NCBI GenBank assembly: GCA_053919585.1
Contig: CM132802.1
DNA: 64,000 nucleotides
Direction: 5' to 3' (one strand)
DNA from: Euprymna scolopes
Taxonomy: Eukaryota
Position 1 is the stretch's first letter. Every line of letters begins with the position of its first letter. Of this stretch, positions 2,631 to 53,252 are shown piece by piece. Under the pieces are notes generated by a model. It saw only the letters and a list, made by a program, of their open reading frames with translations, was not told the DNA's origin and searched no databases. The position numbers were made by a program, and so were the translations under genes.

Positions 2631-4605
2631 TTTTTTTTTCTTTTTTTTTTACAAATGCATCACCACATTATCAAGGCCCAGAGGCCACTCAAGGATAAGG
2701 GTTAAAGAGTGTACAGTAGAAATTGGTCAATATAGTAATCATTAGTAATGAAAATTTGGTAAATTTAATAACTTATATGGAACGGCTCATCAAGAACTTA
2801 TTTACTTTAGACTTGAACACAACTATATTGTAGTCAGCCGGAAAGCAGGAAAACGGAAGACAATTCCACAGGCGTGCAGTTCTAAGAAAGAAGCTTTGTT
2901 CATGGAATCTACGTTTAGGTTTAGGCACAGATAAAGAGTGGGGGAAATTATTGATAGTGTTTACAGCTAGACGAGTGTTTCTTGTGAAAGTTTGGCGAGG
3001 GGGGACCATAGATTGAAGCTCAGTTGAACACTTTCCATGAAAATAACGATACATCAGAGACAAACTCGCAACATCTCTTCTGTGAGATAGAGGTTGCAAG
3101 GAGGAGAAAAGGACATCTCCTACGAGGCTACGAAGTCTATTTTGAACTCTATCAAGGCAGGACAAGTCCTTTCTAGCAGCTCCTGCCCAGATGTGGCAAC
3201 AGTATTCCATCCTTGGACGTACCTGGCTCTTATATAGGTAGAGAATAGCATCAGCAGTGAGATATCTACTGGATCGATAGAAAGATCCCACCATTTTTCC
3301 AGCGGCCTTGGCAACAGATTTGATATACGTGTTCCATTTAAGATCAGGAGTAATGGTCAAGCCCAGAAGCTTGTCAAAACTTGAGGCCTCCTGAAGACGA
3401 GAGCCATTCATTTCAATTGATGACAAATGTGAATTAGAATGTTGATGATGTAAAGAGAGAAGCTTGATTTTAGATGCATTAAAAGTAACCAGCCACTCCT
3501 TTCCCCATTGTACTACGTGCTCAAGATCAGAGGAGAGAGAATTGGAGAGAACTTGGTCGTTTACTGTCTTAGATGTGCTACCATAGATGGTAGTGTCGTC
3601 AGCATAAATGTCTACAAATGATGTAAGGATATGATTTGGAAGATCATTAATGTAGATCAGGAAAAGAGTTGGGCCCAGGATGGATCCCTGAGGGACACCG
3701 GAATTAATACTATGAGCTTCTGATTTTTGCCCCTCAACTACTACTCTTATGAACCTATCAGAAAGAAATGATTTAATAATTGAGAAGACTTTTCCAGCTA
3801 TACCATAGCTAGCGATCTTATGAAGTAAACCTTTATGCCATACCCTATCAAAGGCTTTAGATATGTCAAGAGCAATTGCCCTAGAAAGATTGCCACCGTC
3901 GAGAGATTTGCTAATCCTATACGATATAACTGTAAGGACATCTGCTGTAGATCTAGCAGAACGGAAACCATATTGAGTGTCACTAAGAAGGTTATTTTTG
4001 TTGAGATGTTTGATTACTTCTGTATTTAACACAGATTCTAGCAACTTACTCAGGACGCACAGGAGACTTATTGGCCTGTACTGAGAGGGGGATGAGCGAT
4101 CACCTGAATTCTTAAATACAGGGCATACTGATGAGATTTTCCAGGGAGATGGGAAACTATTCTCCTTAAGACAACGTTTAAACAGTTTTGTAAGTATGGG
4201 CGCTAATTCAAGTTGAAGTTTTTTGAGTACTATAATTGGAATACCATCAGGGCCAGTTGCTTTACTCGAATCAAGGTTTTTGATTAGCTTCGCAACATCA
4301 CGTACAGATATACGTATATCACATAGCGTGTTTTCTGATACAGGAGGAAATATTGGAGGTTGGCGGTCTTGGTCGCAAAGGGTAGAATTAGCTGCAAAGT
4401 TCTTGACAAAGAGTTTGGATTTGTCTGATGCTGACGAGATTACCTCAGGTCCATTGATAATAGTTGGGATGGAGCACACGCTTCTATTCAGGATTCTGTT
4501 TGCTATTTGCCAAAACTGGTGGGAACCAAGCCTCTGCTCAGCTACTTTGGACTTAACAGATTGAGCATACAACACTCTTGCGTTCCTTATTACTTCAGCA
4601 CAGTT
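2631..4605 (-). mobile_element. 5'-truncated CR1/L2-group LINE, copy 1, with 3'UTR and poly(A) tail
   Basis: RT ORF, about 120-bp 3'UTR shared with three other copies, T-tract at 2631-2650. Confidence 0.92.
2773..4575 (-). CDS. Non-LTR retrotransposon reverse transcriptase (ORF2 lacking the N-terminal endonuclease)
   Basis: 600 uninterrupted codons with [47 protein letters not shown] and LYKSQVRPRMEYC motifs; the start is GTG, so the frame is a truncation rather than a true start. Confidence 0.92.
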   Translation of the reverse strand: MLYAQSVKSKVAEQRLGSHQFWQIANRILNRSVCSIPTIINGPEVISSASDKSKLFVKNFAANSTLCDQDRQPPIFPPVSENTLCDIRISVRDVAKLIKNLDSSKATGPDGIPIIVLKKLQLELAPILTKLFKRCLKENSFPSPWKISSVCPVFKNSGDRSSPSQYRPISLLCVLSKLLESVLNTEVIKHLNKNNLLSDTQYGFRSARSTADVLTVISYRISKSLDGGNLSRAIALDISKAFDRVWHKGLLHKIASYGIAGKVFSIIKSFLSDRFIRVVVEGQKSEAHSINSGVPQGSILGPTLFLIYINDLPNHILTSFVDIYADDTTIYGSTSKTVNDQVLSNSLSSDLEHVVQWGKEWLVTFNASKIKLLSLHHQHSNSHLSSIEMNGSRLQEASSFDKLLGLTITPDLKWNTYIKSVAKAAGKMVGSFYRSSRYLTADAILYLYKSQVRPRMEYCCHIWAGAARKDLSCLDRVQNRLRSLVGDVLFSSLQPLSHRRDVASLSLMYRYFHGKCSTELQSMVPPRQTFTRNTRLAVNTINNFPHSLSVPKPKRRFHEQSFFLRTARLWNCLPFSCFPADYNIVVFKSKVNKFLMSRSI

Positions 4606-23507: not shown

Positions 23508-25504
23508 TGGGGGTGTATTTAATTTGTGTGTATTCGGCAAAACAAAACATAAGTGAAATGGCTGCAGAGTGGTCTTAGAATTATTGAATCTATTGTGGAA
23601 CGCTCCACAGCTTGATCAGCTATTTTTATCCATACTGTATTAAGTCTAGCTCTCACTGTCCGTCTCACAAGAGATTTATCTACTTTTTACTGGACCGATA
23701 GAAAGAGTTGAATAAACATTTGTTGAGATAAGGGAAGTAATTATTCGACACTGTATCTTCTGAGGATGCTTTGTTGTTTGTCACTTTTTAAAAATAGAGT
23801 CGTCGGAAACACATCCTATGAATTACTTTCCGGGCACACGGCAATTGATGAAATAGATTAGTCGAGACATCGATTTTCGATCTCTCACAATTCCGACGCT
23901 CGTTGAATCCTTGTCTTTTTGGCGCACTTTTTACCACCCTTTGAAGTCTATTAATGTGTGACGAGATTACATGTCACCTGCTCGACAACATCGCTGACCC
24001 CATGTGTCGTGGATTTTTTCTTTTCCGTCTTCTCTTGTTCTAGTTCTGAACGTGTCGTCATATTACGCATTGGCAGTTGCTAAGAAGGTGCGCAAGGGTT
24101 CACAAGTAAAATTACAAAACCTAATTTCAATGGAAAACAAACATTCTGATACTTAACTTTTATAATGGTTGGGATCTGAGCGCGGGCGTGAGACAATCTA
24201 GAAAAGTAAGTCCTTAGAGCTAAAGGTCCTCATGTACCGTATCCGTGAATTTAGTCAGCCCATTTCGATTGTTTAAAGTCTTTCAATCTGGTCCAAGCAC
24301 TATCCGCCGTAAACTCATTTTTGCCAATCGTAATATATTTCTATTGTTTAGTGGTTTGCCATTTTAATAATTGCCTCACCTTATCATTTAAATAACTATT
24401 TCACATCAGGTTTCTTTTGTGCTTAAATTCCTACTAATTATCGGTTAATGAATTGTTCTAATCGTAGGTTTTTTTGTTTTACTTTCTTAGAATTGGGGGC
24501 ATAGTTTGACGTTAATATTATAACAAATGTACCGTCTGAAAGTTTGTCCAAGTCGGATATGATAGGTATTTTAGAAATATCTTACCAAAACGTATGATTA
24601 AATTCCGGTTGATAATGTTTTACGAAAAATTCTGCCACTTTATATTTTTGCTTGCACGAAAAAGGTGTATTATCTAAAAACATCCATGATGCAGATAGCG
24701 TTGACCTACAGTGAACAGTTATCTCTGAGTTTATTACAGATTCTGGCAGTCTGCTCTATAATGAAACGCTCAGTCTTACATTGACTTCAATATTTGTTCA
24801 ACCCATTTAAAGTTTGTTTTTTAAAGCGAACTTAGACATGTGATATCAGTTCTACATTGAAACAGATTTCTATTTTACATTAATGCTATTTATATATACT
24901 CAGTCTCGTAGGATTTAACTCTAATTTATATATCCATAAATCGCATCGAGGAAAAAGACATTGCTTTCTCTAATTATATATTCAATTTCTTGACTAAAAT
25001 TCAGGAAATCCATATGTAGATGTTTATCTGTCTGGTTTAAATCGTTGAAGTGAATAATGCTTCCTTATTGTATATAACTTATGAAATCTTTGCTTGAAAT
25101 GTGTTTTTTAAAATATCCAGTATTTATTTGGTTCGAGTTGAATGTTGTTCAGTATCGGGAAAGTAATCAAAAATGTAATTGAACTTAATAAAGCAATTTT
25201 TAATTTTGATTTCGGTAACAATTCAAATGAAAAAAGTTGTGGTGGATTTTAATGAATATATTCTACAACGACGCTTTAAAATGAGGTGGTAAGTGTGGCA
25301 GGAAGACTTAAATACAATTGATAAATCAATAAAGAGTTCGAAAAATCTTCTAAAATGTATATATATATATATAACTACTTCATTTATTCGCATAAATTTA
25401 ATATACGAAAGTATAGATTTATGCGTAAACTTTAAGTATTTACTTCAAAAGTGCTCAATACGTAGGTAGAGCTAGTTAGTAATTTATAAAATATATATGG
25501 CGAT

Positions 25505-25558
25505 TAAGCTACACTGAATATTCTGCGTTTCATCCAACTATAGGATTCGTCAGGCTTA
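25505..25558 (-). ncRNA. Type I hammerhead ribozyme (PLE pLTR), intact core
   Basis: Reverse complement reads UAAGC-CUGACGA-AUCC(UAUAGUU)GGAU-GAAA-CGC(A GAAUAUUC A)GU-GUA^GCUUA. Confidence 0.9.
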
Positions 25559-25564
25559 TGCGCA

Positions 25565-25618
25565 TAAGCCTGACGAATCCTATAGTTGGATGAAACGCAG
25601 AATATTCAGTGTAGCTTA
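25565..25618 (+). ncRNA. Type I hammerhead ribozyme (PLE pLTR), intact core
   Basis: TAAGC CTGACGA ATCC tatagtt GGAT GAAA CGC agaatattca GT GTA^GCTTA: stem I TAAGC/GCTTA, stem II ATCC/GGAT, stem III ACGC/GTGT, GUA cleavage triplet. Confidence 0.9.
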
Positions 25619-25641
25619 ATCGCCATATATATTTTATGAAT

Positions 25642-25690
<49 letters not shown>

Positions 25691-26060
25691 ATAATGTATA
25701 CAGAGAAAATGTATATATATAGAAAATATATATGTATCTTTTAACATATATAAACAGAAAAAAATCTTCTAANNNNNNNNNNNNNNNNNNNNNNNNNNNN
25801 NNNNNNNNNNNNNNNNNNNNNNNNNNNNNNNNNNNNNNNNNNNNNNNNNNNNNNNNNNNNNNNNNNNNNNNNNNNNNNNNNNNNNNNNNNNNNNNNNNNN
25901 NTCTAGATACACAATAACAATCTACTTATTAATATAGGCTCATGTGTGGGCACCGGGGCGTCGTTCGTAATATATTAATCTTTGCACATCGAGGATTTTC
26001 ATATTTGTCAACATTAAACATCCGTCGTCAAGTACGTTTAGTCAAAGCTGATGCAAAGAA

Positions 26061-40487: not shown

Positions 40488-40544
<57 letters not shown>

Positions 40545-40567
40545 ATTTATAAAATATATATGGCGAT

Positions 40568-40620
40568 TAAGCTACACTGAATATTCGGCGTTTCATCCAC
40601 TATAGGATTCTTCAGGCTTA
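40568..40620 (-). ncRNA. Type I hammerhead ribozyme in the 3' pLTR, intact core
   Basis: Reverse complement TAAGC CTGAAGA ATCC tatagt GGAT GAAA CGC cgaatattca GT GTA^GCTTA. Confidence 0.9.
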
Positions 40621-40988
40621 TTGCACGAATTCTGTGGTTGTTTTTCGTTTTTATATATGTTGAGGATTTTAGTTAGCCAATCAGCTTTCTAGTATCCACC
40701 GCGCCCCTTCCTATCAGCTAATGGGCATGCATTTTATCGAACAAAGGATATGTTTTAGAACTAGGTTAGTGGTTTAAGGCAGACGATTTTCCTCATTTCT
40801 GCTCTTTTTTTATATAAATATACATATGTGTACACACATACATGCACACATATATACATATATATATACACATATATATATATACATACATATGTGTGGT
40901 CGTTTATGTATATTCATGTTCATCAAATTTATTTATTTATTTGTTTGTTTTCTATTGTTTTTGTTAGTTTTACAGCTATTTTGTATCA

Positions 40989-41477
40989 CTATCCTAGAGT
41001 AATTTTTATTTTGTGAACACAGTTGTTTGCTATTTCTCGTCTACAGTTTAATAGATTTTGGGGTTCTTTAAAGTACAGGATAGCAAATTTTTCATGGAGG
41101 CATAGTTTACATCGGTCATCTAAATGTCTCCACGTGGTAGCTTGTCATATTATTTTCCATTGGACTACCGGCGAATGTCCGCTTTCTTTGAGTTCCCAGT
41201 ATTTATTCGCTAGTGTTGTTTTCATACGGTGTTTTTTATTGTTGAATGTAATTTTGTGGTCATAGTATCGGGTTTTGAAATCTAAGGAAGTCATGCCTAT
41301 GTAATATTTCTTGTTATTTGGGTTTTCTTTCGCAAATATTGTTGCTTGATAAACTACGCTTTTGGTTAGACATTTATTTTGAACTGGGCAAAGTGTGCGG
41401 TGTCTACAATTGCATTTATCTTGTTCGTTATTATTATTATTTTTATTTATGGTATGGTTGTTCTTGTCCGGGGTTGG

Positions 41478-41528
<51 letters not shown>

Positions 41529-43085
41529 TCTGCTAGTGTTGGTTTATTTTTGTCATGGTGTCTACTTTTTTATTGCTTATTTTGTTTTCGTTTACATTGT
41601 TTTTATTTAGTATTTTATTATTATGTGCTTTAGTTATCATCTCTAAATTTTCGCAACAACTGTAAGATAACTTCAAGGTATTTTTATTGAAGATTTTGTG
41701 TAAGGGGTTAGTTGCGGGAAAGTGTTTTTCAATAAGGTCTAGAAATTTCTTACCAAGTTTTGTTTTTAACATTTGATTGTATGGGGCCGTATACCAAATT
41801 ATAGTTCTCTTTCTTCTATTTTTTATTTTATTATAGTTGTTGGTGTTTTGTTGCTTATATTTGATATCGATATTTTTGAATCCACTATTTTTTAGGGCTG
41901 TTTCGTTGACCTGTTAAATGCATTTTCATCGCTTGAGTTATTACTGAGTCTACTTACGATCGAGTTGGGAATGTGTTTTATAATTGATGGTGGGTGGTTG
42001 GACTTAGGGTTTACGTTAATTGGAGTAGCGTTATCTCTTAAGTATGGTTTATATGTGTTTTTATCTAAGTTTAACGTGACGTCCAGGAAGTTTGTTATTT
42101 TTATGTTAGCTGATACGTCTGCTTTTTTCATTTCTTTGTGTATGATTTTCTTAAAGTTTTCTCCCTTGACTTTGTTGGAGTTTTTTTATTATAGCTAGGC
42201 CGTCATCTCTATATAGGTCGATATCTGTAGTATCGAATATGCTTGTGAGGGTATATAGAATGAATAATCCCACAAGATCTTATGCGTCTGCAGAATCCCT
42301 GGCACTCATCGCCAAATCAAACGAATTTTTCATTTTAGTTTTTATCCATTGGTTATTGTTATTTATTAGAACTGATTTTCTACATTTTTTAATGATGTTG
42401 ATTTCTTCCGAGGATATATCAGTGTATGCCTCGGCAAATTCTAGGGCAATGTTAAAAAGTTCTTCGGATATCGAGGGATGAAAGTCTATGATGTCAAACT
42501 ATATGAACGTACATTTATGTTTGTTTTCTATATTTTTAAACCAGGTGATTGCTTCGGTAGTATTTGCCCACTGGTTTAGTTCTAGGTCCTGTTTGATTTG
42601 TTTGTTTACTCTAGAAAGTATAGTTTTGCTAATTCTACCTATTTCTGGTATAGTTGGGTTTATTAGGCGGGTGCTGGGATTATTATTAAAGTCCCATTTG
42701 TGGTCTTTGAGCAGAATGTATTCCTCTCTAGGTTTCAATTTGCCAAATTTATCGCTGATTTTTAGTTTATCGGTAATTTGTTTACTTTCAGTATTTATTA
42801 TATGTATGTAGTCGCATTCGTTTGTGTCTATTTTTTTGTTGTTTTTTGTAATGTTTTCTGTGATTAGTTTGTTATATTCTTGCTTATCTATTTTATAAAA
42901 GTTTCTGGTTTTATCTGTTTTTACAAAGATTTTATTAGAGTTGTTTATGTGTCTAACGATTTCGTGTAGTTTCCGTTGGAAATTATTAGGTTGATTGTGG
43001 AATTCTAGGTTTTTAATTACGTTTAAAAAGTAATTTTCAAAGTTTATCAAAAGGTCTACTTTTTTCGCATTTTTAAGGGTTTTAT
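40989..43085 (-). pseudogene. PLE reverse transcriptase / GIY-YIG endonuclease ORF, 5'-truncated and disrupted
   Basis: VKTDKTRNFY, RLINPT, LYRDDGL, NFLDVTLNL, SNHPPSI, CNCRHRTLCP linker, VVYQAT..YYIGMT..FKTRY, CKLCLHEK...CVH. Confidence 0.9.
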
Positions 43086-43168
43086 CCCCGCCCCCCCCAA
43101 AAAAAAGGACAGAAATGAGGAAAATCATCTCCGTTAAACCACTAACCTAGTTCTAAAACAGATTCTTT

Positions 43169-43262
43169 GTTCGATAAAATGCGTGCCCATTGGCTGATAG
43201 GAAGGGGCGCGGTGGATACTAGAAAGCTTATTGGCTAACTAAAATCCTCAACATATATAAAA
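43169..43262 (+). promoter_or_regulatory. Candidate Pol II promoter inside the pLTR
   Basis: Two inverted CCAAT boxes (ATTGGC), GGGGCGCGG GC box, and TATATAAAA about 30 nt upstream of the HHR; conserved at 40650-40730 (-) and 53060-53150. Confidence 0.55.
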
Positions 43263-43288
43263 ACGAAAAAATACACAGAATTCGCGCA

Positions 43289-43334
43289 TAAGCCTGACGA
43301 ATCCTATAGTGGATGAAACGCCGAATATTCAGTG
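43289..43334 (+). ncRNA. Hammerhead ribozyme copy, disabled by deletion
   Basis: CTGACGA/GAAA core present, but an about 29-nt deletion after AGTG removes the GUA^GCTTA cleavage site and the 3' strand of stem I. Confidence 0.8.
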
Positions 43335-43442
43335 TTACTAACTAGCTCTACCTACGTATTGAGCACCTTTGAAGTAAATACTTAGAGTTTACGCATAAAT
43401 CCATACTTTTGTATATTAATTTTATGTGAGTAAATGAAGTAG

Positions 43443-43494
<52 letters not shown>

Positions 43495-52879: not shown

Positions 52880-53252
52880 TTGATATAAACATGAATATCC
52901 ATAAAAGATCACACATATGTATGTATATATATATGTATATGCATATATATATATATTCATATATGTATGTACACATATGTATATTTATATAAAAAAAGGA
53001 AAATGGCTGCCTTAAACCACTAACCTAGTTCTAAAACAGATCCTTTGTTCGATAAAATGCATGACCATTGGCTGATAGGAAGGGGCGCGGTGGATACTTG
53101 AAGGCTGATTGGCTAACTAAAATCCTCAAAAGAAGAGGACCATATAAAAACGATAAACAACCACAGAATACGCGTATAAGCCTGACAAATCCTAGAGTGG
53201 ATGAAACGCCGAATATTCAGTGTAGCTTAATCGCCATATATATCTTATAAAT

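What the first reader, a model, noticed from the sequence alone, without database searches (positions are those of the whole stretch)
25477..25646. 170-bp palindrome encoding back-to-back hammerhead ribozymes on both strands
Seen: 85-bp arms with one mismatch and no spacer, centred on TATGC|GCATA (25561/25562). Each arm holds a complete type I HHR pointing outward. Both arms share variants absent from the other three copies (stem II loop TATAGTT; CGCAGAAT rather than CGCCGAAT), so one arm was copied from the other. The unit has no ORF and sits inside a (TA)n array. Inference: it arose by fold-back or template switching at the short palindrome just 5' of the ribozyme during PLE insertion. A transcript from either direction would contain one sense HHR plus its full antisense, so it could either self-cleave or fold into an 85-bp hairpin (ribozyme off, possible siRNA source). 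It could be a minimal non-autonomous ribozyme-bearing element or a silencing trigger for the family.
Basis: partly seen in the sequence, partly recalled or inferred. Interest (0 to 1): 0.85.

Follow-up and report, generated by a model that had tools for sequence, protein, structure and literature searches.

The report
Penelope retroelement mirror-image insertion scar
The 170-bp palindrome is real, but it is one of about 4,400 near-identical insertion scars left in this mollusc genome by a hammerhead-bearing Penelope-like retrotransposon that copies the first 84 to 188 bases of its own RNA into both strands of a (TA)n target; this is a known habit of these elements, seen here in a very clean and abundant form.

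Summary
Observation confirmed. Window 25477-25646 is a spacerless palindrome with 85-bp arms and one mismatch. Each arm carries a full hammerhead core pointing outward, although no Rfam model scores it.

The real unit is about 274 bp: inverted arm, arm, tail, with (TA)n on both sides.

The 30-nt centre junction occurs 4,429 times in this 5.9-Gb genome. That rules out an assembly chimera or a one-off event.

[quoted passage not shown] The tail is the next 104 nt of that element's leader.

The two arms of a copy share lineage markers and private variants; no partner shuffle in 2,000 matches this. So each palindrome was made anew from one template and was not inherited as a palindrome.

Arm 5' ends pile up at position 1, which lies 31 nt after a TATAAAA box. 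48 of 51 units have exactly one tail.

Best reading (0.72): both target strands prime reverse transcription of one pLTR-initiated RNA from two internal start sites. Both cDNAs run off its 5' end and join at GCGC. The PLE literature already describes this architecture, and the scan noted similar palindromes elsewhere in this genome.

The silencing-trigger idea was not tested.

The parts
25358..25372 (.). Left (TA)n microsatellite flank (target)
   Evidence: Nearly all 51 sampled units are flanked by (TA)n on both sides.
25373..25476 (-). One-sided 104-nt tail. It is the first 104 nt of the PLE leader that follows the pLTR in full-length copies. Its distal end is RT start site B (position 188).
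   Evidence: It is 94-100% identical to the tails of other units. 48 of 51 units have exactly one tail and none has two. In full-length copies the order is U3, arm, tail, leader, ORF.
25477..25561 (-). Left arm: the last 85 nt of the pLTR (positions 1-85, T-insertion subfamily), carrying the hammerhead in sense on the minus strand
   Evidence: The hammerhead core is at 25527-25553 on the minus strand.
25560..25563 (.). Centre GCGC: the head-to-head junction. The join could be blunt, or a 2-nt or 4-nt self-complementary overlap.
   Evidence: The parent sequence is ...TTCGC|GCATAAGCC (window 43281-43294). The 30-nt junction occurs 4,429 times in the genome, with 0 hits for the reversed-pattern control.
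25562..25646 (+). Right arm: the same 85 nt in sense on the plus strand, ending ATTACTA at RT start site A (position 84/85) and followed directly by (TA)n
   Evidence: The core is at 25570-25596 and the predicted cleavage lies between 25613 and 25614. There is one difference from the left arm, at 25638.
25647..25688 (.). Right (TA)n microsatellite flank
40540..40811 (-). Related linear pLTR copy (U3 + arm, no tail) ending ATTACTA + (TA)n; 3' end of a degenerate PLE
43100..43443 (+). Inverted pLTR + tail abutting the 5'-truncated PLE body. It shows the unrearranged parent of the junction, with TATAAAA at 43256 and arm position 1 at 43286. It has a 29-nt deletion after the hammerhead.
   Evidence: L110
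52990..53256 (+). Solo linear pLTR copy with a mutated hammerhead core (CTGACAA)

Best explanation
The palindrome is an insertion scar of a canonical endonuclease-positive Penelope-like element (PLE), not a gene or an element in its own right.

Shown here. The arm is the 3'-terminal 84-85 nt of the element's pseudo-LTR, which contains its type I hammerhead. The tail is the next 104 nt of the element's leader. Every unit consists of one arm ending at position 84 and, in opposite orientation, one arm plus tail ending at position 188, lying between microsatellite flanks. Both arms of a unit derive from the same template. Arm 5' ends cluster at position 1.

Inferred. The element's protein nicks both strands of a (TA)n target. 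Each 3' OH primes reverse transcription of one pLTR-initiated RNA, one from internal start site A (84) and one from start site B (188). Both cDNAs run to the RNA's 5' end, which is probably the transcription start about 30 nt downstream of the pLTR TATA box. The two identical-sense cDNA ends are then joined by end-to-end template jumping or by annealing of the self-complementary GCGC.

Consequences. Only the first 84-188 nt of the RNA are copied, so the product has no promoter and no ORF and is dead on arrival. Any transcript through it would form an 83-bp perfect hairpin, in which the hammerhead cannot fold.
For: Multi-copy and real:
- The junction occurs 4,429 times, against 0 for the control.
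- The inverted arm also appears as a loose end at the same place in contigs of a DNA run (table 7, X1 at 1510).

Fixed asymmetric anatomy:
- 48 of 51 units have exactly one tail and none has two.
- In an unbiased sample, 42 arms lack a tail and 38 have one.

Made anew each time:
- There are 50 symmetric variant cells, including private ones.
- The arms of one copy differ at 1.40 sites on average, against 3.15 between copies.
- 0 of 2,000 partner shuffles reach this; the T-insertion marker is concordant in 47 of 47 copies.

A continuum of head-to-head twins:
- Junction points vary: (-158,-80), (23,-100), (27,1), (1,57), or a tail-only partner.
- Symmetric junctions sit on self-complementary motifs: GCGC 4,429, GC 673, TTAA-type 212, CGCG 50, and TATATA.

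Defined 5' end:
- 23 of 80 arms end within -2..+2 of position 1, against 23 spread over positions 3-45.
- Position 1 (window 43286) is 31 nt after the first T of TATAAAA at 43256, with CCAAT and GC boxes upstream.

Parent element:
- Full-length copies read U3, arm, tail, leader, ORF, U3, arm, tail.
- Atlas neighbours and 1,527 homologues carry HTH_animal, RVT_1 and GIY-YIG.

Literature:
- An inverted 5'-truncated copy plus a one-sided tail, and a microsatellite bias (PMC8557442).
- Palindromes at head-to-head junctions (PMC3846280).
- A purified PLE protein cleaves and extends both strands and starts RT at two internal sites that bound the tail (PMC11167929).
Against: The transcription start at position 1 was not observed. 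Poly(A) RNA-seq raw reads show no pile-up of starts there and no step in depth beyond what DNA copy number predicts. A short, non-polyadenylated RNA would be missed by such libraries.

The data cannot distinguish two cDNAs made on one RNA from a second arm copied off the first cDNA. Nor can they strictly exclude arm homogenisation after insertion. A few units (L009, L057, L036, L047) carry different lineage alleles in their two arms.

Pfam does not detect an RT domain in the ORF, so RT identity rests on motifs read by eye and on homologues' annotations. Target-site duplications cannot be read inside microsatellites.
Confidence: 0.72

Rival explanations
1. A self-propagating non-autonomous palindromic element (SINE-, MITE- or retrozyme-like). 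Master palindromes are transcribed and the whole arm-arm-tail unit is copied to new sites by PLE machinery.
For: There are 4,429 copies with an identical junction and fixed boundaries. RNA-seq contigs and reads contain family sequence. Non-autonomous PLE derivatives are known (PMC8557442; bioRxiv 10.64898/2026.07.22.740005).
Against: A mutation in one arm of a master would be inherited in that arm only. Instead, lineage and private variants are symmetric. The unit lacks the U3 promoter region. The same subfamily markers occur in linear and full-length copies (L016, L118). Junction variants (a single GC, TTAA, asymmetric joins, fillers) form a continuum expected from repeated de novo joining.
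Confidence: 0.07
2. DNA-level origin after insertion. A single arm + tail insertion was converted to a palindrome by fold-back replication or hairpin-capped break repair at GCGC, or the arms are kept identical by gene conversion.
For: Short palindromic motifs at the centres are also what DNA fold-back mechanisms use. The arm identity seen would also follow from this.
Against: DNA fold-back would duplicate whatever flanks the break. It would not stop precisely at position 84, next to a fresh (TA)n, in 48 of 51 cases. Tail-less and tailed ends occur about 1:1 across all junction types, including tail-only partners. The 5'-end hotspot coincides with a promoter-defined position. Purified PLE protein extends both strands (PMC11167929).
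Confidence: 0.08
3. Host-exploited or self-limiting hairpin RNA loci. The thousands of perfect 83-bp hairpins are transcribed and diced into small RNAs that silence the PLE family. This would be a function added on top of the insertion-scar origin.
For: The predicted hairpin has -154.7 kcal/mol and z = -24.7. The only Rfam matches are generic miRNA-precursor-like hairpin hits, below gathering threshold. Family sequence is present in RNA libraries on both strands. In a bdelloid rotifer, small RNAs map to PLE families, and their profiles switch polarity between the inverted halves of rearranged copies (PMC3846280).
Against: No small-RNA data were examined. RNA coverage simply tracks DNA copy number. 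The listed rows show no RNA reads across the palindromic junction, though 13 joints and 457 loose ends were left unlisted. There is no promoter within the unit.
Confidence: 0.1
4. Assembly or amplification chimera.
For: Palindromes and microsatellites are hard to assemble, and an N gap lies 128 bp downstream (25774-25902).
Against: There are 4,429 copies across dozens of chromosome-scale contigs. They show consistent asymmetric anatomy and independent point differences. The junction is also seen in contigs of a separate DNA run.
Confidence: 0.01

Closest known systems
Inverted pseudo-LTR plus one-sided tail architecture of endonuclease-positive Penelope-like elements (Evgen'ev & Arkhipova 2005 as cited in PMC8557442; PMC3846280; PMC11167929)
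   Same: Head-to-head inverted 5'-truncated copy. A palindrome at the inverted junction. An extension (tail) at only one end. A hammerhead in the pLTR. An AT-rich or microsatellite target. A TATA-containing pLTR. Two internal RT start sites that bound the tail. Both target strands extended.
   Different: Here both copies are reduced to the bare leader (84 and 188 nt). The result is a promoter-less, ORF-less unit of about 274 bp present in thousands of copies with one dominant junction. The tail is 104 nt rather than 30-40 nt. The symmetry of variants gives direct genomic evidence that both arms come from one template.
L1 twin priming inversions (Ostertag & Kazazian 2001; recalled from my own knowledge, not read here)
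   Same: Both strands of the target prime cDNA synthesis on the element RNA. The two cDNAs are joined with microhomology, giving an inverted 5' segment.
   Different: In L1 the second primer anneals at variable internal sites and yields an inversion with little or no duplicated sequence. Here the two start sites are fixed (84 and 188) and both cDNAs copy the same region, giving a true palindrome.
Metazoan non-LTR retrozymes: tandem type I hammerhead repeats giving circRNAs (Cervera & de la Pena 2020 as cited in PMC8557442; bioRxiv 10.64898/2026.07.22.740005)
   Same: A short non-coding pLTR-derived sequence with a type I hammerhead, mobilised by PLE machinery and abundant in invertebrate genomes.
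   Different: Retrozymes are direct tandems, so two same-sense ribozymes excise a monomer. Here the copies are inverted, so a transcript holds one sense ribozyme masked by its own antisense, and no monomer can be excised.
Foldback or MITE DNA transposons inserting at TA
   Same: A short, non-coding palindrome flanked by TA sequence.
   Different: The ends are asymmetric, with one tail. The arms are identical to a retroelement's pLTR. The internal junction varies. No transposase partner is known. The flanks are long microsatellites rather than a TA duplication.

Membership tests
Type I hammerhead ribozyme | Invariant core: C3 U4 G5 A6 N7 G8 A9, G12 A13 A14, A15.1-U16.1, and H17 at the cleavage site | tested here: met
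   Read directly from CTGACGA / GAAA / ...GTA in both arms. Among 165 family arms, the only core position with a common polymorphism is N7.
Type I hammerhead ribozyme | Three helices around the core, with helix I open and helices II and III closed by loops | tested here: met
   The minimum-free-energy fold of a single arm gives helix I of 5+2 bp, helix II of 4 bp and helix III of 4+2 bp. Pairs are kept in 93-100% of 165 arms, but no double compensatory changes were seen. The energy is no better than shuffles (z = 0.27).
Type I hammerhead ribozyme | G10.1-C11.1 closing pair, typical of canonical and PLE hammerheads (PMC4209133) | tested here: not met
   The pair is A10.1-U11.1 in 152 of 165 arms and G-U in 11.
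Type I hammerhead ribozyme | Match to curated covariance models (Rfam hammerhead families) | tested here: not met
   No hit at gathering threshold in the window. No hammerhead hit at E<=10 on one arm.
Type I hammerhead ribozyme | Self-cleavage | not testable with these tools
   RNA reads show no pile-up of ends at the predicted site (table 6), but these were poly(A) libraries. PLE hammerheads are reported to be weak or protein-assisted in vitro (PMC4209133, PMC11167929).
Endonuclease-positive Penelope-like element (insertion product) | Derived from an element encoding an RT with a GIY-YIG endonuclease in one ORF | tested here: met
   The ORF in L118 and in the window shows RT motifs read by eye (K.HK, FDIIDFYPSI, YRDDGL, FLDV, SNHP), followed by a Cx2C linker and GIY-YIG/CCHH. 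Pfam GIY-YIG scores E=3.3e-4 at 21.3 bits, against a cut-off of 22.6. Homologues and Atlas neighbours carry RVT_1, HTH_animal and GIY-YIG. Pfam finds no RVT_1 in the ORF itself.
Endonuclease-positive Penelope-like element (insertion product) | Pseudo-LTRs (partial tandem) carrying the hammerhead | tested here: met
   L118 has U3 + arm at 69-321 and again at 2951-3203, flanking the ORF.
Endonuclease-positive Penelope-like element (insertion product) | Inverted 5'-truncated copy adjacent head-to-head, with an extension (tail) at one end only | tested here: met
   48 of 51 units have exactly one tail. The sampled head-to-head pairs pair a tail-less end with a tailed end, including tail-only partners (L016, L080, L097); a few loci such as L022 are less clear.
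Endonuclease-positive Penelope-like element (insertion product) | AT-rich or microsatellite target preference | tested here: met
   Nearly all sampled copies have (TA)n flanks, and some have (TC)n or (TATC)n.
Naiad/Chlamys PLE clade (the label given to the neighbouring element in sibling note s1-288517) | N-terminal GIY-YIG endonuclease and no canonical hammerhead (PMC8557442) | tested here: not met
   The GIY-YIG is C-terminal to the RT, and a hammerhead is present in the pLTR.
Metazoan retrozyme | Direct tandem repeats with same-sense hammerheads that allow monomer excision and circularisation | tested here: not met
   The arms are inverted, and the unit holds one sense ribozyme per strand.

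The most novel reading that the evidence does not exclude
The element's own insertion mechanism mass-produces its silencers. The roughly 4,400 perfect (and many more imperfect) head-to-head leader palindromes are read through by host transcription. They fold into 83-bp dsRNA hairpins that mask the hammerhead, and are processed into small RNAs aimed at the 5' leader and hammerhead of every active PLE transcript. This would be a built-in negative feedback on PLE expansion in a 5.9-Gb mollusc genome.
Probability: 0.12. Interest if true: 0.7.

Novelty: new member of a known kind. Interest (0 to 1): 0.38.

Why it matters
The finding shows that the striking 'double ribozyme palindrome' is ordinary. 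It is the standard PLE insertion signature in its minimal form.

Its value is as data. Thousands of clean, young, complete twin insertions form a natural record of the otherwise poorly understood PLE integration cycle. Four features stand out:
- a strict rule of one tail per unit;
- two fixed start sites;
- a dominant run-off point 31 nt after a TATA box;
- arms that share even private variants.

Together these support, in vivo, the in vitro picture of two-strand priming from two internal sites (PMC11167929). They also suggest that both cDNAs are templated by one RNA.

There are practical points too. These units will confuse repeat annotation, ribozyme censuses and miRNA or hairpin predictors in mollusc genomes. 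About 98,600 arms are present in this genome.

Tried and rejected
- Whole-genome BLAST-type search with one arm returned nothing, not even the arm itself, because very common words are skipped. IUPAC pattern counts replaced it.
- Rfam gave no hammerhead hits. On the full palindrome it gave only sub-threshold generic miRNA-precursor matches, which reflect the hairpin and not homology.
- Pfam on the window's degenerate ORFs and on the 602-666-aa ORF of L118 found no RT domain. phmmer against PDB gave only spurious weak hits.
- Laying poly(A) RNA reads on a linear pLTR + tail (L027:1344-1699) was meant to reveal a transcription start at arm position 1 and ends at the ribozyme cleavage site. It showed neither: coverage on both strands is proportional to DNA copy number. 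This neither supports nor refutes a short non-polyadenylated leader RNA.
- I considered and rejected that the junction hotspot is explained by palindromic microhomology alone. The equally G+C-rich CGCG motif at position 34 gives only 50 symmetric junctions, against 4,429 at GCGC, although CGCG exists only in one subfamily.
- I considered hammerhead cleavage as the source of the defined 5' end and rejected it. Cleavage would leave position 52 as the 5' end, not position 1.
- I considered a splice acceptor at the 5' end of helix I, as in D. virilis Penelope (PMC4209133). There is no AG at the junction.
- No complex prediction, structure prediction or covariance model was needed.

Full report
**1. 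What is in the window**

Window 25477-25646 is a spacerless palindrome centred between 25561 and 25562. Its arms are 85 bp long. They differ at a single pair, 25485 against 25638.

Each arm reads outward as GCATAAGC-CTGACGA-ATCC(TATAGTT)GGAT-GAAA-CGCAGAATATTCAGTG-TA|GCTTAATCGCC... This supplies every invariant hammerhead position. A single arm folds into the expected three-way junction with helix I open.

That fold is weak: -9.8 kcal/mol, no better than shuffled sequence. The 10.1-11.1 pair is A-U. No Rfam hammerhead model scores it. So 'complete type I hammerhead' holds at the level of motif and fold but is not confirmed by curated models or by activity.

Family variation gives support. Among 165 arms, the only polymorphisms at 8% or more inside the ribozyme fall on three kinds of position: N7, loop II and an unpaired residue of helix III. 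These are exactly the positions a hammerhead tolerates. Parts of that sample were selected on sequence, so this is suggestive only.

**2. The unit is larger and asymmetric**

On the minus strand, the left arm continues into a conserved 104-nt tail (25373-25476) before the left (TA)n. The right arm stops at ATTACTA and runs straight into (TA)n.

**3. It is a very abundant family**

- The 30-nt centre junction occurs 4,429 times in the 5.9-Gb genome at up to 2 mismatches; the reversed control gives 0.
- Of 51 units examined, 48 have exactly one tail, on either side (25 left, 22 right among the 47 clean ones). None has two.
- The arm's 3' half occurs 98,586 times.
- 24,801 arms continue upstream into the rest of the pLTR.

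**4. What the pieces are**

Full-length copies (L107, L113, L115-L118) read in this order: U3, arm, tail, about 80 nt more leader, ORF, U3, arm, tail. The arm is therefore the end of the pseudo-LTR, and the tail is simply the next 104 nt of the element.

The ORF shows RT motifs, including YRDDGL. [quoted passage not shown] Its 1,527 homologues and its Atlas neighbours carry HTH_animal, RVT_1, DUF8422 and GIY-YIG. This is a canonical C-terminal-endonuclease PLE. It is not a Naiad, which would have an N-terminal endonuclease and no hammerhead (PMC8557442). Pfam itself finds no RVT_1 in the ORF.

**5. Each palindrome was made anew**

Across 47 clean units, subfamily markers are the same in both arms of a unit. 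These markers are the extra T in loop II, the A/C/G site in helix III, the T/C/G site in loop II and the A/G site after helix I. Several private substitutions are also symmetric.

- There are 50 symmetric variant cells against 61 one-arm cells.
- Arms of one unit differ at 1.40 sites, against 3.15 between units.
- None of 2,000 partner shuffles reaches the observed concordance.

A palindromic master would transmit arm-specific mutations, and none are seen. So both arms of each unit come from one single-arm template at the time of insertion.

**6. The palindrome is the extreme of a continuum**

I took an unbiased sample: every perfect match to the arm's 3' anchor in 8 Mb of contig 1, giving 50 loci and 80 arms.

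- Arms without a tail and arms with one occur 42:38.
- Most are arranged head-to-head with a partner of the other kind.
- Junction points vary, and some partners consist of the tail only.
- 23 of 80 arms end within -2..+2 of position 1. Another 23 are spread over positions 3-45, with a small cluster at 6-7. 34 continue upstream.
- Symmetric junctions lie on self-complementary motifs. Genome-wide counts are GCGC 4,429, single GC 673, TTAA-type 212 and CGCG at position 34 only 50.

Microhomology therefore shapes the join, but position 1 is favoured in its own right.

**7. Why position 1**

In unrearranged copies, position 1 (window 43286) lies 31 nt downstream of the first T of TATAAAA (43256). 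CCAAT-like and GC-rich boxes sit upstream. That is where a pol II start would be expected. pLTR promoters with a TATA box have been proposed for other PLEs (PMC3846280, PMC11167929).

I infer that position 1 is the 5' end of pLTR-initiated RNA and that the arms are run-off cDNAs. This step is not shown. Poly(A) RNA reads cover U3, arm and tail on both strands in proportion to DNA copy number, with no pile-up of starts or ends.

**8. Mechanism**

The anatomy matches what is published for PLEs:
- an inverted 5'-truncated copy and a tail at one end, with a microsatellite bias (PMC8557442);
- palindromes at head-to-head junctions, attributed to self-priming (PMC3846280);
- in vitro, a purified PLE protein that cleaves and extends both target strands and starts reverse transcription at two internal RNA sites that bound the tail (PMC11167929).

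My model has four steps:
- Both strands of a (TA)n target are nicked.
- One 3' end primes at site A (84) and the other at site B (188) of one leader RNA.
- Both cDNAs run off at the cap-proximal end.
- The two identical-sense ends are joined by template jumping or by GCGC annealing.

The strict rule of one tail per unit suggests that the two start sites are each used once per event, as a dimeric particle on one RNA would do. That last point is inference.

**9. Consequences**

The unit has no promoter and no ORF, so it cannot propagate. In either transcription direction the antisense arm is made before the sense ribozyme. The 83-bp hairpin (-154.7 kcal/mol) will therefore outcompete the hammerhead fold (-9.8).

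Whether such hairpins feed small-RNA pathways was not tested. It remains the most novel possibility.

**10. Verdict**

The feature is real and not an artefact. It is a new and unusually clean instance of a known PLE insertion architecture. Other first-stage notes and one follow-up in this scan describe similar hammerhead palindromes elsewhere in this genome. Those were leads only; the tests above are my own.

Noticed in passing
window 40540-43445: A degenerate PLE copy is bounded by inverted pLTRs. Its ORF order is RT, then a Cx2C linker, then a C-terminal GIY-YIG/CCHH, and its pLTR has a hammerhead. It is therefore a canonical C-terminal-endonuclease PLE, not the Naiad type stated in sibling note s1-288517.
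   Followed up: yes
window 43335 (between ...ATTCAGTGT and TACTAACTAGC): The inverted pLTR copy lacks 29 nt (AGCTTAATCGCC...ATAAAT). The deletion starts within 1-2 nt of the predicted hammerhead cleavage site and ends just before the arm/tail boundary. It could be coincidence, or a template that had been cleaved and rejoined.
   Followed up: no
window 53170-53215: The solo pLTR copy has CTGACAA instead of CTGANGA, so G8 is changed to A. This is expected to kill the ribozyme.
   Followed up: no
L081:480-712, L022:1225-1457, L071:1020-1250: In some copies the arm's ATTACTA end is followed by (TC)n and then (TA)n, or by (TATC)n. The element abuts several kinds of microsatellite. This raises the question of whether the repeats are only targets or are partly generated or extended at insertion.
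   Followed up: no
L027:1561 and 1582 (arm positions 50 and 71): A strand-switch joint is seen in raw poly(A) RNA reads of two runs: 40 and 26 reads, with 22 and 18 distinct starts. It is not seen in the DNA contigs. One side lies 1-2 nt from the predicted hammerhead cleavage site. It is unexplained; it could come from an expressed tail-to-tail locus, a library snap-back artefact, or something related to cleavage.
   Followed up: no
window 25774-25902: An assembly gap (N run) lies 128 bp downstream of the palindrome, just beyond TA-rich sequence.
   Followed up: no
L118:505-2950 (G000 contig 2, 1371204-1373649): A near-intact full-length family member: 666 open codons through the RT, one stop before and one inside the GIY-YIG region, with direct pLTRs of the same T-insertion subfamily as the window palindrome. 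Only about 700 of roughly 98,600 arms in the genome are associated with the 5' part of the ORF.
   Followed up: partly
one search run table: Run labels such as 'mollusc metagenome' and 'invertebrate metagenome' hold 30-40% of the words of the stretch. A second species label (organism B) also holds 43%, so the family is probably shared with related molluscs.
   Followed up: no
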